Under the pieces are notes generated by a model, which was not told where the DNA came from, did not search any database, and saw only the letters and a list, made by a program, of their open reading frames with translations. A stretch of 64,000 nt of DNA from Tubulanus polymorphus (taxonomy: Eukaryota > Animalia > Nemertea): the NCBI RefSeq assembly GCF_964204645.1, contig NC_134031.1, positions 16,479,807-16,543,806 on the forward strand, written 5' to 3'. This document shows positions 2,574 to 33,372 of this stretch, piece by piece. The position numbers were made by a program, and so were the translations under genes. How positions within the stretch are numbered: the stretch's first letter is position 1; each line of letters begins with the position of its first letter.

Positions 2574-5500
2574 TTATTGAGCATCGTCCGATTCCGTATC
2601 GGACAAGAAACAGATGCACATCGAATCGCGACCCATTAAAAGAAGGGACGTTCCGTCCGGATGCCAGCGTAACGACGTCACTTGGAATACAGCTGAAATG
2701 AATCGATCGTAAGGAGTTAATGATCCTTACAAATACAGGGATATACTTCCCGATTTCTAAATTATTATTTCCAATGAATGAGTTTCAGATTCTCTTTCAG
2801 TTTTGACCATCATATCAGCTTATTCAAAAAAAAAAATTTTGAGTCCACCATCTCCAAATCGTATCAAGAGGTGATTTAATGATTTGACAAATCGATTTGA
2901 ATTTGATGCCGTGTTAAATTCAAAGATTAGACCAAATCAAATTTGATTATGACAAGATAAAAATGATTTTACTTAAAATCAAATTTAATTAGATGTGATA
3001 AATTCGCCTTTGTTATCCTACGACATATACTTACATTCAACAGGTATTTCAACGGACAACGCGCCAGCCGGTGACCACATGTAAATCTTATCGGTACCGG
3101 TACACAGAGCTAAACGAGTATTCACCGGATCCCATTCGACACCTACAAAACAAAATACATGCGTTTACAACAGGTTCGATTAACGTTCAAAATCGCTATT
3201 GCTGAGATATGGAATTCTACCTGGACCACTTACATTTGATTGGACTGTTCTGCACAAGAATGACGGCCAAATTTAGCGCTATTATATCCCAGATCCACAG
3301 GGTATGAGGCATGTTGTCTATAATGAAATAAATTTCAAAATACTACACCGATCTCTTAATTACAAATGGTTCTTACAGGAAAATTGAGAGCGGAAGTTAC
3401 CATTTCGAGTGAACATGTATCGGTTATCTTTACTGAACGCCACACATCCGACCCCGAGTTTAGGGTTCGCTTTTTCCAGATCCGGTTTCACGGTGGGTAT
3501 CTGAATCGGTCCCTCGATCACTTCATCTGCGTGAAAACATACCCAATCAAAATCTCTTACTCGAAATTCGTGAAAAAAAAAAACCACAAAATCTCATATT
3601 ACTTACATTTACTTGGGGCCGAAGTCAATTTAGAATTGATCTGGATTCCTCCAATGTTCGGCGTTGGTCGTTTTTCCACCTCGTTGTAAGCTACCTGCGG
3701 ATGGAAAAAGAATCAAAAGTCCATGATTCTGGCAACAGAACCGATTTAATCAATGCTTAATCTGTAACGGGGTCCCTACAGATCAGTCATTCCAGAATTC
3801 AAGGCCTTTCCAGGAGAATATTTCAAATTTCGAGTAGTGTATGCATCACTTTCGCAAGTTACTCTAGACTGCTCATAAATTTTACTGCTTACGGTATCTC
3901 AGTTAACCATTTAATTTGTGTGTATAAGTCCTACGATTACTAACTAGGCCCACGTACCTTTAATTCATCGATCTGTTTCGGATGTTCTTGCTCGGCTACT
4001 GTTCTCCACGTGATATGGTTAAGTATTCGTACCTGAATATACGATCAAATCGGTTACGCTCGATTCAAGTGACATAAAGGGAACTGAAATTTATCGTTTC
4101 ACGGCAGGACGAGGCCGAGTACCTTTTCATCGTAGCTGCCTAAAGCGAGGAACTGACTCGTCGGTGACCAGGCCAAACTCTTAATACCTAAAGCGTAGTC
4201 GTACGCGCTGTAACTGGCTAAACATCGTCCATCCACTGAATACAGCAATACTTTATACTACAAAATCATCAAAATATAGTTACGGAGAAATTCTATTGAT
4301 TGTCCGTTCGTAAGGGTACGGCGCTCGTTATATCTACCTGAAGACAAGTGTCCCATACGGCTAATACTCGGCCGTCCGGCGACCATTGGACTCCTTTTAA
4401 ATCATCGGTTTCTGTTTCAAAATGCTACAAATATTCATTAGATTTCATGGTTACTGATTTCATTTCCAATCTCAATACTAATTTCAAATGCAGCAGGTGC
4501 AGATTCAGCCTACCGCCTTCACTGCTTGAGCGGTGGGCATAGACAGGCAAAACTCAGAAACATCAGGATTCCCTTATTTTGGATATGTGGAAAATTTAAT
4601 TTGACATCCCCATAACTGTGTAAATTACCGGTACTGTATCTGGAGGTAGTAAAATGCAAATTATCTGGGAGGAACCCTATACCCGCCTGTGGTGCCTTGC
4701 CTCTAGGGCCAACTTTGGTTATGTGAGTTAGTCCACCAATAGCCGAACTAAGTGAAACAGAATGTCAGTTACCGGGTAGTCAGAACAATGGTCTGGAAAT
4801 AATTCAGAAATTAAGCGCATTCGCTTATCAGTTCCAACCACTAGTCGACTAGATACGAAAACCGAATTTGGCCCTGACTGAGCCGGGGACTCAGAAACTG
4901 AGGCTGGACCCAAGTCGGTATTGATTTCATTATAGAATAAACCGTACCTTAACGAGTTGCCAGGTCGAACAGGCAAAAATACTGATATAATCTTTACAGT
5001 CTCGACGTTCAGCGAGGGCCATGTACTTTCCACCGGTGCTGAAATCGACGCCTGCAAAACCAAATTGAACCATTAGAGACGGTTTCGTAAATTACCGGTA
5101 AGAAAATATTTCGAAATATTCAGTTACCTTTCTGACAAGCTTTAGGGTATTTGATGTAGGACACCGATTTGTTCAACAGTGACCAAACGGTCATACGGAT
5201 CTGAAAAGTTTAGAAGTAAAAACTTCGACGATTTCGGGCCACACGATTTTCATCGGGATTATCAAATTTTGAGAAAAAAAATGACTTACATGAAAGTCAG
5301 CAGTAGTTAGAATATGCCTCCCATCTGGAGCCCAACATACATCGGCTAAACCAGCCGAGCCTTCGTCTATTTTACAAGTCCACGACGGTTCCTCCAACGA
5401 CCAAACCTATCAATTATTAATTATCCACCAGTTAATCTAGTCTCAGCCAGGCATAGAGCCCTTTCGTACTCTGTACAAGCACTCTGGAATACTTAAAACC

Positions 5501-6461
5501 TAACACAATTATATCCACTCCATCAATCAATGTTTTCAAATCAAACCTAAAAACTCTCAATTTAGAACACAAATTCTGATTTGGTCCGTTCCAAATTTGG
5601 CTCGTTCCAGGTACGGACCGGTCTAACTAGTGGTAACGCGGAGCCTACTGTCTACACATTCTTTAGTCATATGTTCATTTAAAGAATAATTGATTTAACT
5701 GTTTTTAGATTTTTTTCTGTTCTCTTTTGGCCTATGTAAAGCCAATGAGCACATTTCATATGGATTTTAGGCTCAACAGATATAAGTATGATTGAAATAC
5801 TTTTTTCGAGATAATTTTTATAAATAGGGTGCCCATATAAGCAATGCGTTTTGTACCTGAACTAGACCACGTTTGTACATTCCACATAAGACGAATAATG
5901 AATCAGACGACCACTGAAAAGAGAGAATGGTTTAAAAAAGTTATGGAAAAGAGTTAGCTGAAAACCTGAATAATTCAGAACTAATAAAGATCTATTAGTT
6001 ACCTCAATGTGTTGAATACTGTCCAAGCATGCATATAGTTGTAGTATTTGTAGGGTCTTCGTGTCCCGAACCACTAATCTATACTGAACGGCATTGGCCT
6101 GCAAAATAAACAATATAGTTATAAACATTATTTAGAAAAGATTTTCCAAAGTAACCAAACCCAAATCTCTCTAGACTCTAAATTTGCACGAAAACTGAGC
6201 AGACAAATCAAATTAGCTAATTGAATGTACAGCATCATATTGAAATCCGATTAACAATTTGATTGAATTTATTAAACATTAATTTAGTGGGATTGTTCAT
6301 GTAGATTGTTTTTCAAACAGCGATACGAATTTCGCGGTAAAAATTGAATGAATCGAACCTGGAACAACTAAAAAGTACCAACAAATACTCACTAAATAAT
6401 CCCCGTTAGGAGAAAACTTGCATAGATGATTCGATTGTTTGAACAATTCGGAGAAATTCAT
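2574..6461 (-). CDS. WRAP73: WD-repeat protein WRAP73 (WDR8), multi-exon
   Basis: Exon 1 (6393-6461) [23 protein letters not shown]; then [62 protein letters not shown]; last exon ..[26 protein letters not shown] at 2574-2576. Closely resembles human WRAP73. Confidence 0.95.
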
Positions 6462-6539
6462 AATTGTGTTCGCTCAAAATATCATCTAAATATGTAAGAA
6501 ATTGCTATTTTGGAACAAATTTGGGAGAAATTTCAGAAC

Positions 6540-7403: not shown

Positions 7404-8636
7404 TTTTTAGCCCACTTGGGACTTTAGTCCCAGCGGGCTATTGCGTTCCCTTTTCGTCCGTCGTCCGTCCGTAGACGGAATCCAGTTATTTTGAGAAGTT
7501 TTGAAGACGCTTCAAGGTAATGTCTTGATATTTGGGTTACACATGTATCTACCCTAGACACATCTTCAGCCCAAAAACTGGCCCTGTCAGAATCAAGTTG
7601 GCCGACTGGCAGCCATTGTTGTTCACCAAAATCAGCACTTTTTACACATTTTTGAACTTTTTGAGGGAAATTTTGAAGACGCTTCGATCAATTACCTTGA
7701 TCTTTCGGATATATGTGAATCCCCCCAGGGCCCATCAACATAACAAAAATTGGGTCGGTCGGACTCAAGATGGCCGTCCTATGACCTTTTTAGTGCCCAA
7801 AAATGTTAATTTTGGCCCGAATTCTGAGTCCTGTAGCTTCCTACTGGTTTGCCATTTCTCATTACAATTTGTGATGGGTATTCTTTGGAAAGGGATGTTT
7901 TATACCTGAGACAGGTATTTTTCATCAGCCAATTATGACGCAATTGGCGGCCATCTTGGTGTCACCAGTACTCATTCGTAAGTTGGAAAAAGTTTTTCCA
8001 CATTATATTGATACCTAAGCGTATTTTGCTACCACAATCAATTAGAAAGTTGTAGCTCATAACGTGTTCTATGATTGTGGTGAGTTTCAAGGTAATTGGA
8101 TTTCGTACCAGGGGGCGTTGAATAATACAATATCTTAGCATTTCTTTATTATATTCGTATCAATGCATATTTTGTAACCACAATCAATTGGAAAGTTGTA
8201 GCTCATGACATCATCTATGATTGTTGCGAGTTTTAAGCACATAAGTTTTTCTATATGGTCACCAGGGGGCGTTGAATAGTAGAATAACTTCATTTCCTTA
8301 TTATATTGGTACCTAGGCATATTTTGTTACCATGATCAATTGCAAAGTTGTAGTTCGTGACATATTCTATGATTGTGGTGAGTTTCGAGGTCACCAGGGG
8401 GCGTTGAATAGTAGAATGACTTAGTATTTCCATATTAAATTGGTAACGAGGCATATTTTGTTATCACAATCAATTACAAAATCGTAGCTGCTGACATGTT
8501 CTATGATTTTGGTGAGTTTCAAGGTCATTGGATTCTGTATATGGTCACCAGGGGGCGTTGAATATTGAAATTGTTAGATTGTTGAGCATTTGAAACCACT
8601 TCCCAAGTGGGCATGGTGTCCCTGGACCCCTAGTTT
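7404..8636 (+). mobile_element. Non-autonomous Helentron-type (HINE/DINE-1-like) element with internal ~154-bp tandem repeats
   Basis: Starts in a T-run; 5' subTIR CCCACTTGGGA with adjacent inverted copy; (GTCC)-type microsatellite ~7454-7472; four internal repeats; 3' subTIR TCCCAAGTGGG 8601-8611; ends CTAGTT. Confidence 0.8.
8102..8560 (+). promoter_or_regulatory. Four co-oriented CTCF-like motifs inside the HINE repeats
   Basis: TGGTCACCAGGGGGCGTTG at 8256-8274 and 8542-8560, AGGTCACCAGGGGGCGTTG at 8388-8406, TACCAGGGGGCGTTG at 8106-8120; CTCF consensus TGGCCACCAGGGGGCGCTA. Confidence 0.55.
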
Positions 8637-13361: not shown

Positions 13362-16300
13362 ATGTTCCCCGAAAGATCACCGTATTCCATGGTCGCGTCT
13401 CCGTATAGAGATTTGGACCCGGCGTTCTATCTCGACGATGAACTTAGTCGTGTAAGTGGTTATTCTTTTTTAAGAGGCAGATTCTTAGATCACTCGAGGA
13501 TTACTAGAAGGCTTTGACTGCTTCATTTTAGCAGTTCAAGTTCGGCTCTATATTTTTTTGGGAAGAAAAATCATCACTCGGGAAAACAAATCGGTAAAAT
13601 GTATTTACAATTATTTTTGCTCTCAATTTTTTCAGCCAATCAAAGAAGAGCCAATAATAACAACAACGGCCATGTCCCAGGAATCGAACAAGTCTCTGAT
13701 GTCGCAGGAGACGTTCGATTTCCTATGGAGCAATCTTCAAGACGTGACATCGAACGGGTAAGTTGCGACAGGTGTTAAAATTTGAAGCATTTACCGATGT
13801 AGTTTCATCTCAGATCTGAGTTTAAAAACTATGGAACTGGGCCCGGAAAAACAGTTTCTTGAACCCGGTCAAAATAATTACATTTATGGCATTTACCTCG
13901 TTCCGTCCATTTTATTGCTTTATATGGGTTTAAAACTGGTCATTGATAATTTTGGGCTGGGCAGTTTAATTCTATGAAACCTATTCGTCATTGGTAATGA
14001 CTTTGTTAAGGTCCGATCGGAATTCCGAGAACTCGATTCTTTACCCGGGAAAAATATTGCCTACAATTAAGACCACTACCGGACAGCGCGGTTTGCGCGA
14101 TCCCTTTGAAAGCTTTCGTCGCGACGAACAATGTATTGTTTAAACGTAAATTTAAATCGCGGTTTGAATTCCAATTTACATTGAGCGCGCTAATATTATT
14201 TGCTCGCCGACGTGACCTTCACGAAGCCAACTATGCAAATCGAGAATCGGTTTTGATTGCTGAGAATTCGTCATAATTTGTCTGAATTCTTAAATTCGAA
14301 TTCGTGTCTGTCGAATTCGATCGCGTTTTCTGTTAGTGTAATTTAATTTATGAGAATTAGTTTTCGAGGTCGGTTAAATTTTCGGCTGATAAGTTCGAGC
14401 TCGCGATGTATACGAAAAACGAATGCTGTTGAAGTATGTCTTATCTGAAATGTGTAAAGTCCATCCCTGATATAATTTATGTATGTAAATACAGAACTGA
14501 TTATGACTACTATTTGAGAGTGGTTTCTGCTCTTTAAGACCTCAACTACTCAAAAAGATATCGAAATACCCTAAAATTGGAATGATTTCTTCAATTTCAA
14601 CTTCTATTTTCGATGTCAAATTACTCTTATCTTTAGTGTAAATTACAACTTAGAGATATCAGGTAGTCCGGTCTGTAGAATAAGTTCATGCTTAGAATAT
14701 GAAAGTCGACAAATTTCGGAAATTTATTCAAAATTTACACCTCTCATCGGGTTGTAGAATATGTACTTTACGCGTCTCGTAAACGTTTTCAGTACACTTA
14801 ACATTTAACGCGATCAACCGAACTTTTCATTCTCGTTTTACCGAGAAAAAGGTCCCTTTTATTCGTTCGTTCATTTGTTTTCGTTAAGAGAAGATTCTTT
14901 TGCGAGAAGAAAACTTCCCGGGCGTTGAACACGTTAACCTATTTGAGCTGTTATGCAAATGAAGACGGTACTGGTTTCATATCAGTGGCACTTCCTGATT
15001 TGTCAACGCGGCGACTTTTTGGAAGCGCTCCAACCAACCGAACCGTCTCATGAGCCACCCCTAGAATTGAATTCAACGTACACGCTGTTGTCTTCGATGT
15101 TATATACGCTGAAAGAATATTACGGCGATTGTACCGCGCGGTCCCCGGGTATTTTATTCTAATTAAGGGTAGCTCGTAACGCGGGATAGGCCCAGGCAGA
15201 CCTGACTTGGCAGCCGAGCCGATTGGATAGGACTATGGCGACTAGTGGAACTATAGTGTATTTCAGCGATAGGTAGGCCATTTTGATTCGCAGTACTGCC
15301 ACTTACTAGACAAACTTTTGAACTTATCACCAAAAACTTTCTAAAATTAAGCGTATTCTTTTTTTTTTTTTTACTAATCGAAATAGCGAGTTTTTTCGTC
15401 AATTCCCTCATTCGATCTCGGCTTCTGCCAATATTGCATGTATTTCACATAATTCTTTTTTCAACTGAATGAAAATCTAGTGGCTCGTTCCTGTTGACAA
15501 TTAATTGAAAAATGGCTAGCCGATTCAAATTGTGAAATAGTCTGACGGATTTACTAACCATCTTCGTAATTTTTGGAACTAACTCTGAGTTTGTTTTTTT
15601 TTTTTTTTCAATATATTCAATATCTGTTTGTCGATAATGCATATATTTTTGTGCAATTCTTTTTTTCGACTTAATGAAAATGAAGTCACTTGATCCTGTT
15701 GACTTTCAATCGAAAAATAGGTAGCTGATTAAGATTGTAAAGTAGTCTGAAATTATTATAACAATCTTCAAAATTTTTGGCAAGCCAATTGTTTGAATAT
15801 TTATTTTCTATTTTTTTTTTTGGTCAGAATTTTTATGAAAATGTTTTTTTTTTGGTTTGGTCATTCTAATCATCGACCTAATAAAATGCACATTTTCCCC
15901 AATGAGTAAAAAATAATTCAGTCAATAGATTCCATCATGATGATTACAATATTTATTCTACGATTAGTGATAGTGAGTATATAGGCACTGTGAGAGGTGG
16001 CTGAAAAACCTATTCCGGGTGGTTCGCATTCATAAACAACTCATCTGCCGGTTTTTCATAATAAATGCGAAGAATCTATTATTCCTAATGATAATTTGTG
16101 ATCGGTAAAGTGTGAAGGACATAGGAGATAATCCCACCCACTTTTCAAGTTGTTTACTACTTTGAAACAAATTGACCCGGTGACTCATCGGGGTGTTTCG
16201 AATGTTATCAATCAGGTTTTTTGATCAATCAATGGAACAGATTTTCCGGGTTCGAACGGAATGCAGATTTTGTTGTCTTATATCGCTAATCTAATTCCAA

Positions 16301-19300
16301 TTCGCTGTCAATTACTTACGGGGATATAATTTTAGAAGGGCCCACTAGATTTCATTGCAGGGGGGCCGCTTACCTGGAAATCAGGGAAAACTCGGAGAAT
16401 TTTCTTCTCTTTAAAGAAAGTCGGGAATTTTGTAAAAACAAATTAAAAAACCTAAAAATCTCAGAGAAGGATCTGGGTAATTTGTTGAGATTACTTGATC
16501 AACAGTTTCCTTCTACAAATGTCTTATGTATTTGACTCTTAGTTAATTGCATTCTTAGCAGATCAAGTAAAAGAATAGTCGGGGAATAAGCAAGTCAAAT
16601 ATATAAGGCCTCCTTGCATAAATTTTTTTTAATTTTTCAATTTCAAGTGCGTTTGATTTATCAATTAAAGCTGTGTTTAAATCATCTGGATTCCGTAACT
16701 CTGCAATTATGAAAAAATGTCCATTTACGTAAATATAGGTATATCTTGCAGACATCACCAGTGAAAACATAACCATTAAAAGCGATTCTAAGTCGTACAA
16801 TAAATCATCGCAATTCACTGCAATGAATCATTCTATGAGTCTATCGCGAATTGAAACATTGAATGAACGCTTTTTTATTCCATTCAGTAAGATCATATTT
16901 GCGATAAATATGGCTAAATCGTTTGAATGCGTTCCAGCGTTGAGAATTGCTATTTGTATCGAGTAAATCATTCGCTAAAAAACACTTCTATTCATTTTGT
17001 CCCCCTCGAAATGCCAGTTTTACTCGCGTTTTGTTAAAGTCGTCTTGTTTACGAAGAGAGACCTTTTATGAACCAGGGGTCGGGAACTGAATTTTATTCA
17101 TCAGGACATGAATAGAGAATAGGTATAATTCAAGTCCCAAAATAAAACACTGTAGACGTTTTATGTTGACTGTTTATTCGATATGAACAAGCTATAATTT
17201 TCCTAGTGGAATTTCGGAATTTTTATCTCAACATTGCTTGTTTAGGTAAAATATCCAACTCGGTCCAGAAAAAGCAATTTGAGCAATTTTCATTCATCTT
17301 GCACAGAAATCGTGTATCATTTGACCTATTGCAAGTTTACGTATTATGAAATTATGAAATCCTAAAGAAGATATATTTTTAGTATTAAAAAGGGATTGGA
17401 TCATAAACTGTCAGATCATATCAGATAGCTGGTGATAACAAAAAACTACCCTTTCTAAAACGGTGAAATATCAGGTTTTGATTTATGTCAAAATGATAAT
17501 TTTTGTTTTTTTGTTTTTGTTTTTTTCTAATAGGGATCTGTCACAGCTTCACGCGAAAGATGTGGAATATTCGTACGATGATAATTCGAGTGACCATTCG
17601 GCGAGTATACAAGTAGAACGTTTCTCTCTTGGAAGTAGCGCCTATAATCGTTCGGATGTGCTGCCCGACCTCGTAAGTATATCCAAGAACATTTGAGAAA
17701 AGATTCGATCATTTTCTCTAAAACATAATTACCATGCAATAGATGTTTTGTCGACAAAAATAGAGGGCCTGGGTCCGGTGGCCCTCCCCTAAATCCGCCC
17801 CTGACAGTTGTACCTTTATCCTTGATTCGGAACTAATTAATGTCAACCGATTACTGCTGGACTGGGTTCGGATTCATAGCGCGATTTGGAAAAGAAATCA
17901 TGAATCTCGACTTGCGTAACTCGAAATTGTACCGTACTTTTTCAATGCTTTTTATGCACAATGCTGACTGATGCATTGAAAAGTGCACTACCTGCGAAGT
18001 GTACACACTAGGAGGTGTTGGGATATCACTTCTCTAGACATGCCCAGACTTGAATCTTAAAAAGCAGCATAAGCCTGATGAGAGTATTAGTCATTTCATG
18101 TGAAGTCGTTGATACGGAAAATGGACTGTATTCGATCTGCAGGTAGTTGATAGAAATATTTTTTTCGAAATTCCTACCGAAGATCGATTGCGAAATAGGG
18201 ACTAATTTCGATGATGAGTAAGTTGTTGTTATTCGCGGTCGGGATGGGATGGGTCCTTGCTTCCGATGACGTCATGTACAAGTCTGAGCGTGCCTCGAGA
18301 CTTCAGCATGGCGAGGAGCACCCGATACGATCTCCGCAATGGAAAGAAAACGAGAAAATGTTCAGTGCACTTGGTATGAGCTTTATTACTGAATTTGTCC
18401 TTTGAAACTAGAAGGAACTTATAAGAAATATGGCCGCGCCGTTAAAAATCTATAAGTATTGATTGATGTGAATTCTAGATATGTGGTTCCATTAAATTTC
18501 TGTCCGTTGTTTGGTAAGAGCATACGCCGGTACGTAATTTCAGCGCAATTCAATCTAAACCTATAAACCTTTGTACCTGAAACTTCAACGAGTACAATAC
18601 TGAATACACAAATGTTGTATAATGTATTTTACCCCATAGTGGACGTTTCCATAAAGGAAATTCCCCGTATTTTAAATCTGCCTATTTTGTAAGCGGTTGG
18701 TTAAGAAATATAAGACGTTAATTGCGTTTTGAATTCCGGAGTTATTTATCTCGTCTCGTCAGTCGGTGTATAAGTTGAAAAAACGGTTCGAATTCATCGA
18801 TCGCGTTCGTGAAAATATTTCCCTTTTCGTTCTAATGATTTCAACGATTTACTGTTTCAATCATGACCTGCAGTCTTCTGAAATCTTCTGAATACCATTT
18901 AAACGATGAAGATTAGGTTATTCATTGTTTTGTTTTCTTTTATCTTTATAGTTTATCCCGAACAGCGGAGCGAATGGCGTCATGTCTCCAGACTCACAGA
19001 CAGTTACCTCAAGTCCCACATATTCAGTGCCAGACACAAGCACTCAGGTACTTTTCCTAAAATATTCATAACTCAATACTCTCCGTCAAAGGGCCAGTTG
19101 CTTAAAAGTTGGTTAAAGATAACCCATGGGTAAATGCCAGAGTAACAATGAACCTTTAATTGTTACTGTGTCAACTAATTAGCTGTAACCAACTTTTGAG
19201 CAACTGCAGCCTGAATTCTACATTGACATCAGTCTAAGATATTAATTATTGACTTGTGAAAATTTCAGCGATCGCCTGGTCCTTATTCGCCAGTATGTAA

Positions 19301-21635
19301 CAGTACCCCGACTCCATCTGTACCATCAAAGTAAGTACGATACATCAGGTATAGATGTCTCAAATCTTTAAATATTTGTCTATGTTTATCCAAATTCCAT
19401 CGATATCCGTTCTAATGAAATCGTATTTGTTTACAGTACGAATTACTCAGGGGAATATGGTTTCGAAGTGTCCGTGGCGCAGCAGTCAAAAGAGACTAAG
19501 TCGACTACATGGACGGTAAGCAAAAAGACAAGAGGGGCCACTTACTGGAAATCAGGGAACTTCTAATGAAAAAAAATTCAAAATCGGGGAAAAGTCTGGG
19601 AAAAAGCGATTCAAATATAAGTGCCCAACCTGAAACAGCAAGGAGTGAATTCAATAATTTCGAATTGCGACTCTCGAACTTGGAATAAAAACCTGTCACC
19701 CTCAATATCAGTAATCGTTCAAGTTCATTTCATAATTCTTTCAATTTCTGTTTCAGTTTTCTGATCCGTTGAACAAACTGTTCGTTCGTCTGGCCACCAC
19801 TTGTCCGATCCGGTTCCGAACGACGAAGCCTCCGCCTCAGGGCTGCATTATTCGCGCGATGCCGATCTACATGAAGCCCGAACACGTGCAAGAAGTGGTG
19901 AAACGCTGCCCGAATCACGCCACAACAAGAGAACATAATGAGAACCATCCGGCGCCCGAACATCTCGTCAGGTGTGAGCATAAATGCGCTCAGTACTGGG
20001 AGGATCCGTATTCCCATCGTCAAAGCGTCATCATTCCTCACGAGAATCCGCAGGCTGGTAGCGACTGGGTAACCAATCTATACCAGTTTATGTGCTTCAG
20101 TTCGTGCGTCGGTGGTTTGAACCGGCGTCAAGTCCAGGTCGTCTTTACCTTAGAAACAGCGGAGTAAGTTTTCCTAATTTCATCTGATTTGCTAATTTTT
20201 TTTCGCCGATTCATTTCGTAGATATTTGATGAATATTTGTATCGTTTTTTTTCCGTAGCACGAAAGTTCTCGGACGTCGCGTCTTCGAGGTCAGGATTTG
20301 CGCCTGCCCCGGCCGCGACCGTAAAGGCGAGGAAGCCAGCCTGAAGCCAAAACCAACGAATGGTGAGTTTATTCAGAATATCGAATAATTTGAGGGTGCC
20401 CACTTAACTGGATATCAGGGAAAAGTCGGGGAATTTTCTTTTCTTTGAAAAAGTCTGAATTCGGTAAAGAAAAAGAAAAACCATTAATCAGGAGAAAGTC
20501 GGAGAAATTGAATGAGATTCAAGATTGCGCATATAATCAAACAGATTCTGTCTGTGTTTTTTTCATATTTGACTTTGTTAACTGATAGAATTCTTAACAG
20601 ATCAAGTTGGGGACAAAGCACGGAAAAAGCAGTCAAATAAAAGTGGCTACCCTGTATTCAGTGCATCGTTATGTTGCGCAATATTTCACTCCGTGTATTC
20701 GTATCATTGTAGTGACGATGTCAACGGAGATATACTCGATCGGCCCGGCGGCTAAACGTAGAAAGTTGAACAGCAACGAAGTCTTCACCGTGCAAGTGCA
20801 CGGGCGCGAGAATTACGAGATTCTCTGTAGGATCCGCGATTCGCTGGAGTTGAGCGCGATGGTGTCGGCGGACCACGTTACCGCGTATAAGCAGCAACAA
20901 CAGCAACAAGAGAGTATTCAGAAACAGTAAGTTTGAAGATTCTGTTGAAACAGTATAACTGTTTCTCTCTATTCGTGCTTTCTCCGTGCTGTTTAGTGCC
21001 TAGGACTCGAGCAAACTCGATAGACTCCTTCTTGTTCTCGATTCTTTGCTGTTTACCCATGAAAACTGGTTTGAACGTTTCGAGCATCGTTTTGAAAATT
21101 GATGCACTCTTCTTAAAATGCTTTTATATGAGCTTAGATTTCTTGCTTTTAGCTCTTTTACTTCGATGCCTTTCAAAGGACCTTCCCACTTCCCCATTTT
21201 AAGTGCCGCAAATTAAAACTATCGAAGGCAAATCTGTCTCTTTTCCGATATGAATGTAGCCTGTTGCAAAAAAGCAAGCCCACTTCCCCGGTCCTGCCCT
21301 CAATCTGTATTGAAAAATCATACCGGTATATCAAAGAACTGTTTTGATTTTACCAGATCTCTCATCAGACGAAGGTAAAAAAAAGTTTTCTGTTCATTTC
21401 GTGATCTAACATTGGTGTTACGTATGAGTCCAGTTAATGCTTAGCGAAAGTTTGGTATTTGACACAAATGAAGTGCAGTGCTATTTGGTATCTCATGATC
21501 AGTAATGGATTTGTGAAATTTGCAAGATATTTTTAACAAGCCCGACAGTTGTTCAGAGGTCTGACATTTGGTTTGAGGATGAATTTTCGTTTTGAGATCT
21601 TCGTTTTCATCGTTATTTGTCATCGTTCTCATTAT

Positions 21636-21698
<63 letters not shown>

Positions 21699-24600
21699 TA
21701 TTTGGTGTTAATACTCAGAAATAATGCACCATTTGGTTGAATCCTGGCATTGAATAAATGCGTCAAATAATTCTATTTGTTTGAAGACAAGTTTTGTCAT
21801 CTTTGTTTATTGAACAAATGTACAAATCAGCGATCAGTACTTCATCTGTACTTGGATCGAATCAGAGGATCAGAAGATAGTGAATTTGATAAGATATAAA
21901 CATCTCTGATGATATATTTGTAATGATTATTATTATCATGATTAATTATCTTTACGATAATTTTGTCTGAAACGCGTGGAAACGCGTTTATTCTAGATAA
22001 GTACTACGACAATTCTAACCAAGCCATCTGGTGCATTATTTCAGGGTCGTTACAACGAAAATCGCGAAACAACACAATCGAGCCGTTCCTCCTCAACCGT
22101 CGTCATCGTCGTCGTCATCGAAAAAGGTCATCGCGCAGCCGTTGAAGGTCCCGATCGGTGCGGCCGTCTCTGCGGCCATCCCTCAGCCCGTCGAGTATCC
22201 TCCGTCGAGATTACCGGGAATAAACGCAATGTTGTCGCTGTGATCGCCTGCTGCCCGTTGTTCAATAGTTGGAAAGCCGTCTGCCCATAACAGAGAGTAC
22301 CCGTTTGGTGATTGAGTACCTATCTACCCGTTGAGTAGCCGTCTGCTGGTTGAGTCAAGCAGCCGTCTGCCTGCTACAGAGTCAAGAATTGTCACCGATC
22401 AGAATGAACTGAGTAGTCTGAAAGCGCATACCGGTAGACCTACAGCGATAGAACTATCGTCATTGTACATAGAGTGTTTTAGCTGTGTTTGATATTCAGA
22501 TTGTTCGGGTTCAGGGATTTAAGAATGTATTTCTAGATATTCTGTGTAGAGTACGACGCGAATGCATAATTCACATTCTGTGAGCTATTTCTCTTTTTTT
22601 ACGACTTTGCATTTATTTATGCTCGAGCTATTGGCATTTTTTCTTCACGTATTTCTAGAGAGTATTATTATCGCCGACGAAAAAATAAACACATTAAAAC
22701 GAAAATGCATGTATTTCTAAAAAAAAAAAAAAAACATGACAGTTACATTTTGCATTTTGAATTTTTACACAAAATCTTAACGATATTTTAACTAACCAGT
22801 AGTTTGATTGTGAAAATAGATACTAATGAAATTCTTTGAAAAAATCATGTCCTAATTGAAGAATTGTACACTATTTTGTTCTACGGAAATTTTTACAAAC
22901 TGTATTCGATAAAATAGTTTTGATTTCGCATAGTCTGCATGTAGTTTATCTAATCATTAGCTCGCTTATATAGATGTCTAGTAGTATTGAATCTCTTTAC
23001 GAAGTAAACGTTTTGCCCTTCTTCAGGTAGCTGTTATCTCTGTTTATTGAATCTTCTTATCACGTTCAGTAAGCCCTCTCCACTTGAGAGACAAACTGAA
23101 ATAAGATAAAAGCGTAGATAAATGAGTTTTTTTTTTTTTTGTTTAGTCTTATTTTTTTATCAACAAATAAGAAGAAAATGAATAAATCCATGGCAAAGGG
23201 AATGTTTTATATTTTTCATATCAAGTTAGTTCACTTTTACCTTCTGTGTTCGAAACTTTATACTCATATTTGTCAAATCGGTATTTAATCATATTCCGCG
23301 TGTTAATGCTGTCTATTTGAATTTCGATTTCTGCCCGGAAAATCATCCCTTATGAATTGCACAGAATCTCTGGGCTGGATGGCAAAGTCAGACTGGATAC
23401 TAGTACTTATATCGTACATCTTCATCTATCCTCCAATCTAATGGAGAATTACTTAAAAACTAGATGAGTTGATCCAGATTAAGTTGAATTCAGCCAGTTG
23501 AGAAGACAACTAACAAGCTAGAATATAATTTCTATGTAAATAAAGTATATACACCGGTAGTGTATACGACGGATGGTTCAAAATGTATCGCGCATAGTTC
23601 AAACTGTGCTACTCGATCAAAAATTCTTTTCAACGAGGGCGATTTTAATTTGAATGGAATTTTATCATCGAGTTCGAATTTTAAATCTGAAAGAAAGCCT
23701 TAATTTTATACGTCGTTATAAAAGTGTTTCAGAGACAAAGAAATGGATGCCAAAATATTAACTTACTGAATGTATGATGTGGTATGCGGTATGTGGTATT
23801 TACGGATGTGCTCTCTGTGAGTATAATTCATTGAATGAAGACATCTACTAAGGCTTACTTGCTTTTCATGGTTAAAGTTTTCATCACGTGTCGCATTGTT
23901 TTCATGTAATTACTGTGACATGATGAAAACACTCCTGTCATTTTCGAATCAATGATTAGCGATTGGAGCTACTTGATAATTACTGCATCGGACACTAATT
24001 TGCCATCTAAATTAGTTGTTTTCTTCTTGTGTTGTCAGAAACCTAATGTTGTATTGTAATAATGATATTATTATTATTATTTGAATGTTTTTTGTTTTGT
24101 ATGTTGTATATTAGAGTTTATTATTATGTTTATTATATTTCTGTCATTATGACTAGTATTGACTCACAAAACATGAAATGAACATTGAGCTTGGTATGAT
24201 ATCAGTGAGTTCATATACCGGTATATCTAGTAAGTGGGATATGTTATGACTATGCCGTGTAATACTTTGCCTCTGTTTCACTGTCGGTTGAAACTGCTCG
24301 AGATGTCCTCGGTTATAACTAGTCTTACAGATAGGGAAGGGCCAGTTCCATTTTATTCAGTCCAAAAGTAGTCTTAAATCATGAAATCGGCTGTACAACT
24401 AAGATGGTCTGAGACTGATTTTAAGTGTAAGCCATGATTATGGAAGCGACCCCTGATTTATCGCAGATTTCTTATACCGCCTAGATATTCATTGTTAAGT
24501 GTCAGAAATTTGAATCTACAAAGAACGCACATTTGTTGTTTATTGGTATATCATTGTATGTATTATGATGCGGTGGGATCAGAGTACTAAGTATTTCTAT

Positions 24601-28766: not shown

Positions 28767-30028
28767 CAGGTGTCAATTCATTTTCGTTACTTCGACAAGA
28801 AATATCAATACCATAAGAAACTTCGATACATTTAGTTCCAGTTATCTGCATTTTGACGACGTTGTTTTTCTGGGATGTTCAAAGCATTTATATATTCCCT
28901 GAATTCTTTTGCCCTCTCCGTGTCGAGGACCGTACGCGGTTTATATTTTGGAAGGCGAATAGCCTGCATTTCATAAAATCTCATTTGAAATGGAATTTTC
29001 GTGTATGTATTTAATTGGATACTCGGTCTAGATCGCAGAGTTTCTCATATACTCGAACCCGAATCGTTAATGTTATATTAGATTTCACGGCGAAAACTTG
29101 TTTGTAATTTGGTTTTCATATATCAACTGCCAAAACCTTAAATTCGTAGGTATAAGGATCATTGTAATTATGTTAAGAGTGTCTAAAAATGTACACCATT
29201 ATGCAAAGTGATTTTAATTTTTGTTTTATCCGGTCAGATACAGACTGGCCAGTAAAAAAAGTGTCCAGCTTTTATTGTGGCTCATTGTGCGAAAAATAAT
29301 GTGCTCAACTATTACGTAAATTATGACTTCATCAAAAAAGAAATAGAACATTTTGTTGCAGGGAATCGGTCGATTCCAGCTGCAGCAGCTGTGACAAGCA
29401 GTTTAACTAATTTGATAGTTGCTGAGTTTGGGGAGTCCAACACTCGGTGAACAGATTATGTCAAAGTTATTTGAGTTTAATTTGAACATTCTACTGATTT
29501 GCTGAATGTTTTTTTTGTGTACACCATATTTTGATTCGCTTACAACAAACCCCTTATTGGTTTTGCGAACTAGATTTTTTCTACGATGTATATTAATTTT
29601 GTTGTAATTATTAAAACATAACTCTTTTGGAAAAAATACTAATACTATGTAAGTGATAGTATAGGAACGTTTATGATAATGAAATACTATTAGAAAATAC
29701 TAACATAATTATTGTGTAGAAAAATCAGGTTCAAATAAAAGCAAATTTATTCATATATAAAACAATGAATTCTTTCTCTTTGACGATGATTTCGCAGATG
29801 ATAGGATAATTTCATTATTCTCCTTTCATTTAGATGGTATGTTGATGGAGAAAATAATTTTGTTCACAAAGGAGAAAAAATAAAGATATTTGAAAGCAAA
29901 CATTCTCTTTGTGCTGCCCCTATGCGTGAACGGGGAAACCACGAACAAAGCTCTTGATGATCTATGTAGATCATGATATCAACAAGTTTAACAAGTTTTG
30001 GTCTTATTCACGCATAATTTTTACTACG

Positions 30029-32204
30029 ATGACGACGTATGATTTCGTCGCTGCGAGTTACGTAGCGTTTGTCGTACTATTACTGAGCTGTTCTGTCGCT
30101 GCTGTTGATGATGGCGGTTTTAGTTGTAAGGATCCAAATGGTAAAAATGTTAGTTGGTAAGTCAGTTTCGCTTCATACATGCTCTAGTGTATTGTCAGCA
30201 GTCAGCAGTCAGCAGTCAGCAGTATCGTCGATGGATCTAGTTTATACTGGTGACCATGATTAGATGGTAACTAGAGGGTTAAATATAATGCACCTGACGT
30301 CATACAAATGACGTCACAGCGCGCGAAACTGAGTTTCGTTTAATCGTGTAAGAATTTTACAAATATCAAAATATATCATTTTTCGTACAGCACAATTCTT
30401 ACCAGACCGTATACACCTTTTAGGATACGAACATTCAAACTCATCTTGTGAACTCATCTCGCATACGAAACACAGCAATGGCCTTCAAAAGATGGTTAAC
30501 TATCGCATTTTGTGTTCTAGGTTTATCGTCTACAAAGTACCGAAATTGCCAGGAAACAAAAACAAACTGATAGCCGCCGGTTTGGCACATTTTTACCTGG
30601 ATGCGAATAATCCGAGTCCGTTTCGACTTTCCCCGGTTTCCGTGGCTAGTAGTAGCGGACACGCCCTGGCAAATACGCTCAAACAGATGCACGATGGATT
30701 CATACAGAAAACCGTAAACATTAATCGAATCATCACTGAGAACAACTAACAAAAACTTCGTTTGAAAATTATTATGATTTTTCAAATGTTTTTTTTTTAG
30801 GATGTTTTGAGACTTCTTATGAATGATGAAACACCAGACAAACACAAAGACTCGTACCATGCCCACCAGAAAGGTAAATTGAATCCAGTTGTCTCAATTT
30901 ACAAACGTAGCTTTACGGGATTGTAAATGTTAATACATTGTTTGAAACAGGAGTTGTGCTGTTCAATCGTGACGGAGGATTCTGGATGGTTCATAGTATG
31001 CCACGGTTTCCAAACAGGGCTAATCGTACCTACGGATGGCCTGATAAAGATTTAAGATATGGACAAAGTTTCCTGTGTATTAGTATGAATTCCACTTTTC
31101 TGGATGTCATAGGTAACAAGTAAATGTATATGATTTATACTGACGTGGGAGTGAAATGCAATTATTGTATTTACAACAGATACCTTCATTTTTTTTCAGC
31201 CAATCTACTTGCTATCAGTCACCCAACGGTTTATGATTTCAATTTGCCAAAGACGTTCAAGGTAAACGCGATGTTTCAGCAAATAGCTCACAACAAAGCA
31301 GTACCCGTGAATGTCACCTATAAATCGTCGATTATAACGGCATCCGGCACTTACTTAAAAACATTCCAAGCATTTTCGAAGAGTAAGAAGTTTAACAAAG
31401 GTATATCATATTCCATCGCCATTTTCTTTTCATTATTCCTTGCGTTATTTCTAGACTAATGTTAAATCGTTTTTTCTTTAAGATCTGTATGGTAGTCTCG
31501 TAGCTCCTAGGTTAAAGGCTAACCTGAGAACTGAAACATGGCAACATGGACATCGTATTCCTTCAACTTGCCCTCCGTCGGGTTACCGGGTAAGAAATCT
31601 AGTAATCTGGATGGCAAAATATACTTAGAAGGCGTAAATCATAAAAGTAATGTGCACAAACTTTTTTTGTAATCTAGGTTGAAAATATCATTACCGTTAA
31701 ACTTGGCAATTCGATAGTATTCAACAGCACTCACGACCATTCCAAGTATGCCGTAGGCGATACGTCACCAATTGTCTGTATCGGAGACATTAATCGACAG
31801 GTATTACAGGATTGCCCGAACATTATTTCAAAGAGCTACCCAAGGCCTACCCAGGCTTATTCACAACTTGCGTTATACACTTTTTGCCCATACCTTTCCC
31901 AGATGATTGTTCCATGTTTCATGGGATCGCCTAACGGATACGAATCATATAGAATGATAACTTTGGAGTATTCAGTCTGATTACTCCAGGATGATACGAA
32001 ACTAATTCTGTTTATTTGCCTTTTCAGTATTCTCAATTCCACAGAGGAGGTGGTACTGTTTGTATATTTGATGCTAACGTATGGCGCGTGTTCCAGTCAC
32101 TGATTTTAGCCATCGAAAAGTGTCCTAATCACATTGACGAAACACTGAAATTCATTCCTAGGCGTAGAATGATCGTTCATAATAGTCCTACGCAGTATAC
32201 GTAG
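30029..32204 (+). CDS. DNASE2: Deoxyribonuclease II (plancitoxin-like), paralogue 1
   Basis: Exons 30029-30156, 30521-30713, 30801-30873, 30951-31112, 31200-31400, 31483-31589, 31678-31800, 32028-32204; signal peptide, SCKDPNGKNVSWFIVYKVP, AHQKG, GFWMVHSMPRFP, YGQSFLCIS, DHSKYA, CIGDINR, RGGGTVC. Confidence 0.92.
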
Positions 32205-33319: not shown

Positions 33320-33372
33320 AAACCCTAAGTGTCGTTTGAGTCAAATTTCAGAGACACGGACGTTTATACGAG

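What the first reader, a model, noticed from the sequence alone, without database searches (positions are those of the whole stretch)
18036..18373. Internal p53-responsive promoter and deltaN exon: a candidate autoregulatory loop
Seen: the intron between the TAD exons and the DBD contains a two-half-site p53 element (AGACATGCCC AGACTTGAAT) directly before TATA-like and Inr-like motifs. A GC-richer exon follows, with a strong Kozak ATG and a phase-0 donor that joins exon 18952 in frame and removes the FxxLW TAD. Known: the vertebrate deltaNp73 internal promoter is induced by p53/TAp73 as negative feedback. Inference: one invertebrate gene encodes the whole TA-to-deltaN feedback circuit.
Basis: partly seen in the sequence, partly recalled or inferred. 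Interest (0 to 1): 0.8.

Follow-up and report, generated by a model that had tools for sequence, protein, structure and literature searches.

The report
Likely internal promoter of worm p63
Inside the single p53-family gene of a ribbon worm lies a p53-type binding site, at the spot where seven relatives (another ribbon worm, five molluscs) start a shortened, inhibitor-type isoform behind a similar site; this suggests the self-limiting loop known from vertebrate p73/p63 is old, but the proposed exon itself is unproven.

Summary
The window holds the only p53-family gene of the nemertean Tubulanus polymorphus (RefSeq "tumor protein 63-like", 652 aa). The finding lies in intron 3 (17673-18951), the intron that carries the deltaN promoter in vertebrate p63/p73.

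Taken alone they are weak:
- A site this close to the p53 consensus is expected about 1.3 times per window.
- Intron 3 holds 28 chance "ATG to phase-0 GT" segments.
- Donor 18373 scores below all eight real donors checked.
- Nine ATGs lie between the Inr-like motif and ATG 18308.

The comparative test changes the picture. In Lineus longissimus and five molluscs, deltaN first exons are annotated or cDNA-cloned. In all six a zero-spacer p53 site with at most 2 mismatches lies 145-200 bp upstream of the deltaN ATG (about 0.7-1% chance per locus; no column-permuted control motif hit more than 2 of the 5 loci tested). Tubulanus intron 3 has two such sites (P about 4e-4).

Verdict: a p53-responsive internal promoter is likely. 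The exact exon (ATG 18308, donor 18373) is only the best in-frame model. It is a new member of a known kind.

The parts
13672..13757 (+). Coding part of exon 2 of the p63-like gene: start codon and FxxLW transactivation motif; donor in phase 2
   Evidence: Pfam P53_TAD E=8.4e-6; 100% tblastn match to P0062 residues 1-29
17534..17672 (+). Exon 3 (TA-specific, 46 codons); its donor opens intron 3
   Evidence: tblastn of P0062 residues 27-75; sequence read
18036..18055 (.). p53-type response element RE1: two abutting decamers, first perfect (CATG core), second with 2 flank mismatches
   Evidence: the DNA search; half-site scan; analogous elements upstream of deltaN exons in 6 relatives
18058..18097 (+). 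TATA-like TTAAAAAG (18058-18065) and Inr-like TCATTTC (18091-18097): candidate core promoter, unverified
   Evidence: Read directly from sequence; AT-rich genome, so individually weak
18267..18274 (.). Perfect CRE/ATF palindrome TGACGTCA directly abutting RE2
   Evidence: Only 3 copies in the window (18267, 30295, 30309)
18276..18295 (.). Second p53-type element RE2 (2 mismatches, one in a core W position), 13 bp upstream of ATG 18308
18308..18373 (+). Candidate deltaN-specific coding segment (22 codons, basic peptide), phase-0 donor GTATGA at 18374; best in-frame model but unverified
   Evidence: no Pfam family; no similarity to Lineus or mollusc deltaN peptides
18952..19047 (+). Exon 4, first exon common to TA and deltaN forms in relatives; begins in phase 0
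   Evidence: tblastn of P0062; Lineus isoform X6 and mollusc deltaN isoforms join their unique exon to the orthologous exon
19269..20362 (+). Exons 5-8 encoding the linker and the p53 DNA-binding domain
   Evidence: Pfam P53 E=4.3e-45 and 3.6e-8; 79% identical to the Alvinella DBD 7pc6; nearer to p63/p73 than to p53

Best explanation
Positions 18036-18373 are the internal (P2, deltaN) promoter region of the single p63-like gene of the nemertean Tubulanus polymorphus. The region lies in intron 3, as in vertebrate p63 and p73.

Proposed mechanism: the full-length TA protein, or the same protein activated by stress, binds as a tetramer to the abutting decamer pair at 18036-18055, and perhaps to the second pair at 18276-18295 next to a CRE. 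This switches on a transcript whose first exon splices to exon 4 (18952). The product keeps the DNA-binding, tetramerisation and SAM domains but lacks the FxxLW transactivation motif. It can therefore compete for sites and form mixed tetramers, which is a negative feedback.

Shown here: the gene, its exon map, the elements, and their conservation in position upstream of deltaN exons in six lophotrochozoan relatives.

Inferred: binding, transcription start, induction and dominant-negative action.

I give that detail about 35-40%. A non-coding or different first exon accounts for the remainder of the 0.58 given to this explanation.
For: Gene identity and structure:
- The window encodes XP_074655602.1, tumor protein 63-like.
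- It is the only PF00870 locus in the 268-Mb genome.
- The element lies in intron 3, 916 bp before exon 4. In Lineus the element is 866 bp before exon 4.

Comparative test:
- Lineus isoform X6 (unique 15 aa spliced to exon 4) has a 2-mismatch zero-spacer element at -195 from its ATG.
- Gigantopelta has one at -200 (0 mismatches), Pecten at -162, Patella at -183 and -146, Haliotis at -145, and Mytilus edulis at -147.
- Such matches occur only 1-6 times per 34-60 kb locus.
- P per locus is 0.007-0.01; the product for five loci is 3e-11.
- None of 1000 column-permuted motifs hit more than 2 of the 5 promoters.

Tubulanus itself:
- Two elements in a 1.28-kb intron, P about 4e-4.
- A rare GC-rich patch and a CRE sit beside RE2.
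- The region is single-copy, not a repeat.
- DNA-contact motifs of the DBD ([23 protein letters not shown]) are conserved.
- p53-family DNA specificity is reported as conserved across distant species (PMC2807882).

Vertebrate precedent: the P2 promoter lies in intron 3, exon 3' encodes 13 unique residues in frame with exon 4, and a p53-responsive element forms a feedback loop (PMC2194062).
Against:
- RefSeq models only one (TA) isoform for this gene, and no other Tubulanus p63 protein is in the 5.8-billion-protein collection.
- Donor 18373 (TTG|GTATGA) scores below all eight real donors checked.
- Nine ATGs, several opening out-of-frame ORFs, lie between the Inr-like motif and ATG 18308.
- RE1 lies 272 bp from ATG 18308, against 145-200 bp in relatives. 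The ATG at the 'right' distance (18211) is out of frame.
- The candidate peptide is not similar to the Lineus or mollusc deltaN peptides, and no alignable non-coding block is shared with the Lineus intron.
- One near-consensus element per 64 kb is expected by chance.
- The Lineus element has both mismatches in core W positions.
Confidence: 0.58

Rival explanations
1. The elements are functional p53-family binding sites but act as an intronic autoregulatory enhancer or silencer on the upstream P1 (TA) promoter or on a neighbouring gene. Tubulanus makes no deltaN transcript from this intron.
For: RefSeq has a single TA isoform. No convincing first exon exists: the donor is weak and there are many upstream ATGs. 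No deltaN-peptide homology.
Against: In all six relatives the equivalent element sits directly upstream of an annotated or cloned deltaN first exon, so a promoter-proximal role is the simpler reading. A GC-rich, CRE-bearing patch follows the element.
Confidence: 0.15
2. Chance: two near-consensus decamer pairs and an open ATG-to-GT segment happen to lie in an ordinary intron, and nothing here is functional.
For: 1.29-1.47 matches with at most 2 mismatches are expected per window. Intron 3 holds 28 phase-0 ATG-to-GT segments. The TATA-like and Inr-like motifs are common in a 37% GC genome.
Against: Two elements in 1.28 kb, P about 4e-4, and 3 of 1000 permuted motifs do as well. The same intron carries the same kind of element before deltaN exons in six relatives. 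GC patches of this strength cover about 1.3% of intronic windows.
Confidence: 0.18
3. The GC-rich patch belongs to something else. One option is a small nested gene for a 64-residue peptide with a signal-peptide-like start (ATG 18211, stop at 18403-18405). The other is a cassette exon (acceptor before 18307) spliced from exon 2, whose phase 2 it would fit.
For: The frame from 18211 stays open for 64 codons, with a hydrophobic N-terminus. ATG 18211 lies 175 bp after RE1, the distance seen in relatives. Segment 18307-18373 is 3n+1 long and matches the phase-2 donor of exon 2.
Against: No paralogue anywhere in the genome and no Pfam family. The acceptor before 18307 lacks a pyrimidine tract. The inserted peptide would be strongly basic in an otherwise acidic TA region. 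Neither form is in RefSeq.
Confidence: 0.05

Closest known systems
Vertebrate deltaNp73 P2 promoter and exon 3' (human/mouse TP73)
   Same: Internal promoter in intron 3. A short unique exon is spliced in frame to exon 4 and removes the TAD. A p53/TAp73-responsive element in the promoter gives a negative feedback loop (PMC2194062, citing Grob 2001 and Nakagawa 2002). A TATA-type core promoter follows the element.
   Different: In Tubulanus nothing is shown experimentally. The unique peptide (22 aa, basic) has no similarity to MLYVGDPARHLAT. The intron is 1.3 kb, whereas the human start site lies 7.6 kb after exon 3. The gene is a single pre-duplication p63-like gene with a SAM domain.
Vertebrate deltaNp63 promoter (p53-family-responsive, autoregulated)
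   Same: The gene here is closest to p63 by DBD sequence and has the TAD-DBD-tetramer-SAM layout. A deltaN form from intron 3 is the major p63 form in vertebrates (from my own knowledge).
   Different: No evidence here of tissue-specific use. The peptide is not similar to the vertebrate one.
Lineus longissimus tumor protein 63-like isoform X6 (XP_064642875.1)
   Same: Same phylum. A unique first coding exon (15 aa) in intron 3, 627 bp before exon 4, joined in phase 0 to an exon that starts with F as in Tubulanus. A p53-type element lies 195 bp upstream of its ATG and 866 bp before exon 4.
   Different: The Lineus exon has a strong donor (GCT|GTGAGT) and an acidic peptide. No sequence similarity to the Tubulanus candidate, and no alignable intron sequence. 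It is a RefSeq model, whereas the Tubulanus RefSeq annotation lacks such an isoform.
Molluscan deltaN p63/p73-like isoforms (Mytilus trossulus/edulis cDNAs AAZ05998.1 and AAZ05996.1; M. galloprovincialis deltaNp63gamma; Lottia TPA deltaNp63alpha)
   Same: Alternative first exon spliced to exon 4 of a single p63-like gene. I found one or two tandem p53-type elements 145-200 bp upstream of the deltaN ATG in five mollusc loci.
   Different: The mollusc peptide MIK[VF]ERTGFTTYR is almost invariant and absent from Tubulanus introns 2 and 3. Mollusc promoters share a further motif (TGATTATCATAATAAAT) not seen before the Tubulanus element.
Delta133p53 / zebrafish Delta113p53 and arthropod deltaN p53 isoforms (Drosophila, Litopenaeus)
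   Same: An internal promoter yields an N-truncated isoform. The 'dual gene structure' is described as conserved (PMC5374463). The vertebrate forms are themselves p53 targets (from my own knowledge).
   Different: Those promoters lie further 3' (intron 4, or exon 3 in the shrimp) and remove part of the DBD or a different N-terminal span.

Membership tests
p53/p63/p73 gene family (p63-like, SAM-bearing) | TAD motif, p53 DNA-binding domain, tetramerisation motif, C-terminal SAM region | tested here: met
   Pfam P53_TAD, P53 and P53_tetramer on window exons. P0062 carries PF00870, PF07710, PF00536 and PF07647. It matches the window at 87-100% identity per exon alignment (94-100% away from splice junctions).
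P2/deltaN internal promoter of p63/p73-type genes | Located in intron 3, between the TA-specific exons and exon 4 | tested here: met
   Exon map from P0062: intron 3 is 17673-18951 and the elements lie at 18036 and 18276. The deltaN exons of Lineus and the molluscs lie in the same intron.
P2/deltaN internal promoter of p63/p73-type genes | Transcription start within the intron | not testable with these tools
Only TATA-like and Inr-like strings are available.
P2/deltaN internal promoter of p63/p73-type genes | Unique first exon with an ATG spliced in frame to exon 4 | tested here: inconclusive
   An in-frame model exists (18308-18373, phase 0). However, the donor is the weakest of those scored, there are nine upstream ATGs, and 28 chance alternatives exist. 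No such isoform is in the databases.
P2/deltaN internal promoter of p63/p73-type genes | p53-family response element (two RRRCWWGYYY decamers) in the promoter | tested here: met
   18036-18055 and 18276-18295, each with 2 mismatches and zero spacer. Enrichment P about 4e-4. The same holds in six relatives.
P2/deltaN internal promoter of p63/p73-type genes | Binding by, and induction through, the TA protein or p53 (the feedback itself) | not testable with these tools
   Needs EMSA/ChIP, a reporter assay and DNA-damage induction. The only indirect support is conserved DNA-contact residues and reported conservation of specificity (PMC2807882).
Lophotrochozoan deltaN exon (orthology with the Lineus or mollusc exon) | Sequence similarity of the unique peptide or of the flanking non-coding DNA | tested here: not met
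   Best local scores in introns 2 and 3 fall within the shuffled-sequence range. blastn of the two nemertean introns gives only chance-level matches of 10-17 nt. The regex for the mollusc/annelid motif finds nothing in intron 3.

The most novel reading that the evidence does not exclude
The TA-to-deltaN autoregulatory circuit, meaning a p53-family response element placed 150-200 bp upstream of the deltaN start codon in intron 3, is not a vertebrate invention. On this reading it was already present in the single ancestral p63-like gene of the common ancestor of nemerteans, molluscs and vertebrates. The Tubulanus window would be one instance of it, with a lineage-specific replacement of the deltaN peptide.
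Probability: 0.45. Interest if true: 0.7.

Novelty: new member of a known kind. Interest (0 to 1): 0.55.

Why it matters
If the element works as in vertebrates, one ancestral-type gene would contain both the activator and its own inducible inhibitor. That would place the negative feedback logic of the p53 family before the p53/p63/p73 duplications and before the protostome-deuterostome split. It would also explain why deltaN exons persist in molluscs and nemerteans although their peptides diverge.

The comparative result gives a directly testable set of seven promoters: six relatives plus this one. I found no report of such elements in invertebrate deltaN promoters in the open-access library searched. 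That library lacks most subscription papers on mollusc p63, so the novelty is not certain.

For genome annotation, the result suggests that the Tubulanus gene model lacks an isoform.

Tried and rejected
No place was reported as human-like.

2. Looking for a Tubulanus deltaN protein. The word search with the DBD exon and with P0062 region 76-300, plus the cluster look-up, found only the TA protein. The third word search (fragments, or the 64-aa ORF) was not spent. No Tubulanus-derived fragment had appeared, so its chance of success was low.

3. Joining the candidate exon to exon 4 for a search.

4. Homology of the candidate peptide, or of any intron 2/3 frame, to the Lineus or mollusc deltaN peptides. 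Scores were at noise level.

5. Conserved non-coding blocks between the Tubulanus and Lineus introns. None found.

6. CpG-island logic. The genome has CpG observed/expected of about 1.17 overall, so this is uninformative.

7. Repeat or transposon origin. The region is single-copy.

8. Paralogous p53 genes. None.

9. Nested signal-peptide ORF. No paralogue and no family.

10. An annelid test locus (Dimorphilus P0218) and two deltaN isoform look-ups were not on record.

11. Other donors downstream of the element are stronger (18143, 18514, 18530) but have no in-frame ATG.
Full report
WHAT IS IN THE WINDOW. The plus strand between about 13.6 and 26.5 kb encodes a p53-family protein.
- Pfam finds the transactivation motif in 13672-13755, the DNA-binding domain in 19757-20164 and 20260-20361, and the tetramerisation motif in 20712-20927.
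- An exhaustive protein search with the largest DBD exon returned a 652-residue protein, P0062, at 99% identity.
- The cluster look-up names it XP_074655602.1, "tumor protein 63-like [Tubulanus polymorphus]", a palaeonemertean ribbon worm.
- tblastn of P0062 on the window gives this exon map: exon 2 coding part 13672-13757 (FDFLW motif, phase-2 donor), exon 3 17534-17672, exon 4 18952-19047, exon 5 19269-19330, exon 6 19437-19515, exon 7 19757-20163, exon 8 20259-20362, exon 9 20712-20926, and further exons to about 26543.
- PF00870 matches nowhere else in the 268-Mb assembly, so this is the only p53-family gene.
- By DBD sequence it is nearer to p63 and p73 than to p53. The closest solved structure is the Alvinella DBD 7pc6.

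The finding lies in intron 3 (17673-18951, 1,279 bp). This is the intron that carries the P2/deltaN promoter and exon 3' in vertebrate p73 (PMC2194062).

CHECK OF THE OBSERVATION. All the strings are present at the stated coordinates.
- Element: the decamer pair lies at 18036-18055. The first half-site is a perfect RRRCATGYYY. The second has a CTTG core and two purines in the YYY flank.
- Core-promoter strings: TTAAAAAG follows at 18058 and TCATTTC at 18091.
- Start codon: ATG 18308 has A at -3 and G at +4.
- Frame: the 22 codons end at 18373 before GTATGA, in phase 0. Exon 4 starts in phase 0, so the join is in frame and would drop residues 1-75, including the TAD.
- Composition: the segment is GC-richer than its surroundings. 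It is 48.5% GC for 18308-18373 and 57% for 18228-18335, against 34-41% for the rest of the intron and 47-61% for true exons.
- Patches that GC-rich cover only about 1.3% of 108-bp windows elsewhere in introns 2, 3 and 9.

Taken one by one, however, the features are weak.
- The window has 3 matches to the 20-mer consensus with at most 2 mismatches, against 1.29 expected, and 10 of 100 shuffles reach 3.
- Intron 3 contains 28 open "ATG to GT, phase 0" segments.
- On a simple donor matrix the candidate donor scores -0.1 bits, below all eight real donors of the gene that I scored (1.8-6.9 bits).
- Three stronger donors lie downstream of the element (18143, 18514, 18530), though none has an in-frame ATG.
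- If transcription began at the Inr-like A (18093), ATG 18308 would be the tenth ATG. Among those before it are a 9-codon uORF with a good context (18121) and out-of-frame ATGs at 18211, 18214, 18244 and 18274 whose frames stay open to the donor. There is also one in-frame ATG at 18266.

WHAT CHANGED THE PICTURE: RELATIVES. The word search with P0062 and the cluster listings show that deltaN forms of the single p63-like gene are already on record in Lophotrochozoa.
- cDNA-derived entries: "delta-N p63/p73-like protein" of Mytilus trossulus and M. edulis, and deltaNp63gamma of M. galloprovincialis.
- A third-party annotation: deltaNp63alpha of Lottia.
- RefSeq isoforms in many molluscs.
- Within the same phylum as the window, isoform X6 of Lineus longissimus.

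Mollusc deltaN forms start with an almost invariant MIK[VF]ERTGFTTYR joined to exon 4. Lineus X6 starts with 15 unique residues joined to an exon 4 that begins with F, as in Tubulanus.

I fetched the genomic loci of Lineus (L004), Gigantopelta (L006), Pecten (L007), Patella (L008), Haliotis (L009) and Mytilus edulis (L010). I then mapped the deltaN exons. In Lineus the deltaN exon lies in intron 3, 627 bp before exon 4. The Tubulanus candidate donor lies 578 bp before exon 4.

In every one of the six loci a zero-spacer decamer pair with at most 2 mismatches lies upstream of the deltaN ATG:

| Species | Position relative to the deltaN ATG |
|---|---|
| Lineus | -195 |
| Gigantopelta | -200 (no mismatch), plus a 3-mismatch pair at -161 |
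| Pecten | -162 |
| Patella | -183 and -146 |
| Haliotis | -145 |
| Mytilus | -147 |

Matches of that quality occur only 1-6 times in each 34-60 kb locus.
- With first-order Markov simulations, the chance of at least one match in the 300 bp before the ATG is 0.007-0.010 per locus. The product for the first five loci is 3e-11.
- The mollusc loci are not independent by descent. But retention across gastropods and bivalves is itself evidence of constraint.
- As a control for local composition I permuted the columns of the motif 1000 times. No permuted motif hit more than 2 of the 5 promoters, while the true motif hits 5 of 5.

For Tubulanus the independent question is whether intron 3 carries such elements. 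It has two (18036 and 18276). The Poisson P is 0.03 for one and 4e-4 for two, and only 3 of 1000 permuted motifs give two hits there. The element lies 916 bp before exon 4 in Tubulanus and 866 bp in Lineus.

MECHANISM, AND WHAT IS SHOWN VERSUS INFERRED.
Shown:
- A single p63-like gene with two p53-type elements in intron 3.
- A perfect CRE palindrome (18267-18274) abutting the second element. Only three copies of this palindrome exist in the window.
- An unusual GC-rich patch.
- One possible in-frame first exon.
- The same element-before-deltaN-exon arrangement in six relatives.
- The DBD keeps the DNA-contact motifs of the family. DNA specificity is reported to be conserved among distant family members (PMC2807882).

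Inferred: the TA protein binds these elements and induces a TAD-less isoform that competes for sites and forms mixed tetramers. This is what has been described for deltaNp73, which is induced through a p53-responsive element in its promoter (PMC2194062 citing Grob 2001 and Nakagawa 2002).

My estimates are:
- about 0.58 that this is a p53-responsive P2 region that drives a deltaN-type transcript;
- within that 0.58, about 0.35-0.40 that the exon is exactly ATG 18308 to donor 18373;
- the remainder of the 0.58 for a different or non-coding first exon. In that case translation could start at the conserved Met of exon 4 (VMSPDSQ), which is present in all lophotrochozoan sequences seen.

EVIDENCE AGAINST.
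- There is no RNA evidence. 
- A follow-up note on another gene of this genome also reports that no RNA evidence could be obtained.
- RefSeq gives this gene a single isoform, whereas Lineus has six.
- The candidate peptide (22 residues, strongly basic) resembles neither the acidic Lineus peptide nor the mollusc motif. No frame of introns 2 or 3 does.
- The two nemertean introns share no alignable block.
- RE1 is 272 bp from ATG 18308 and RE2 only 13 bp from it, outside the 145-200 bp range of relatives. The ATG at +175 from RE1 (18211) opens a 64-codon frame with a signal-peptide-like start that is out of frame with exon 4. That ORF has no paralogue in the genome and no family.

STEPS LEFT OUT. 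Exons were searched one at a time by reference. The third word search was not spent.

COMPARISON WITH WHAT IS KNOWN, AND NOVELTY. The arrangement works like the vertebrate deltaNp73/deltaNp63 P2 system and like the deltaN forms already cloned from mussels. An invertebrate deltaN isoform is therefore not new.

What I could not find reported is a p53-type element at the invertebrate deltaN promoter. The library searched is open-access only, so this absence is weak. I class the window as a new member of a known kind.

The more novel reading is that the whole TA-to-deltaN loop predates the vertebrate gene duplications. The seven-locus pattern makes this testable, and I give it about 0.45.

VERDICT. 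Observation partly confirmed. Interpretation partly supported: the promoter-with-element idea is well supported by comparison, while the exon, transcription and feedback are unproven. Interest 0.55.

Noticed in passing
window 2577-6473 (minus strand); L004 4650-8753; L006-L010 upstream genes: A WD40 gene lies head-to-head upstream of the p63-like gene in Tubulanus. Its exons match the WD40 gene in the same position in Lineus at 66-87% identity. The same neighbour is called in five mollusc loci. This looks like conserved p53-family/WRAP73-type microsynteny.
   Followed up: partly
L006 18730-18850, L007 32000-32135, L008 28780-28900, L009 41215-41315, L010 26420-26490: Mollusc deltaN promoters share a TGATTATCATAATAAAT-like motif 60-90 bp upstream of one or two tandem p53-type elements. 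The proximal element (GGGCAWGATTAGGCTTGTYA) is nearly identical in Patella and Haliotis, and partly so in Gigantopelta and Pecten.
   Followed up: partly
window 18460-18472; L004 17338-17350: A PBX/HOX-like TGATTGAT string (13-nt match with one difference) occurs in both nemertean introns. It lies 118 bp upstream of the element in Lineus but 184 bp downstream of RE2 in Tubulanus. By blastn this is chance level.
   Followed up: no
P0218, P0236, P0239, P0243, P0262, P0226 N-termini: Annelid-like and other mollusc proteins without a TAD start with a related motif ([FY].FT[GN][RK]K, or ERTGFTTYR variants) just before the exon-4 LNP/LNA residues. The deltaN peptide may therefore be conserved between molluscs and annelids, but not in the two nemerteans.
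   Followed up: partly
L004 17511-17654: In Lineus a 47-codon upstream ORF starts at an ATGGCG between the element and the deltaN ATG. It ends with a TGA that overlaps the deltaN start (ATGA). If it is transcribed, this is a termination-reinitiation type arrangement.
   Followed up: no
window 22000-22290 (intron 9): This is the only other strong GC-rich patch in the gene's introns apart from a small one near 15123. It has several open frames and could be an alternative 3' exon (gamma-type C-terminus, as in molluscs).
   Followed up: no
window 29930-32100 and 33340-34950 (plus strand): Two tandem DNase II-like genes (Pfam PF03265 on first-exon ORFs, E=8e-5 and 4e-8). Two CRE palindromes lie at 30295 and 30309 within the first one.
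   Followed up: partly
window 7965-8573 (minus-strand frames) and 21600-21700: A tandem repeat of about 165 bp with open, mutually similar frames lies in the WD40-p63 intergenic region. A long (CAT/ATG)n microsatellite lies in intron 9.
   Followed up: no
window 18612-18640: ATG TTG TAT AAT|GT encodes MLYN, recalling the MLY start of the vertebrate deltaNp63/p73 peptides. The donors are weak and it is probably coincidence.
   Followed up: partly
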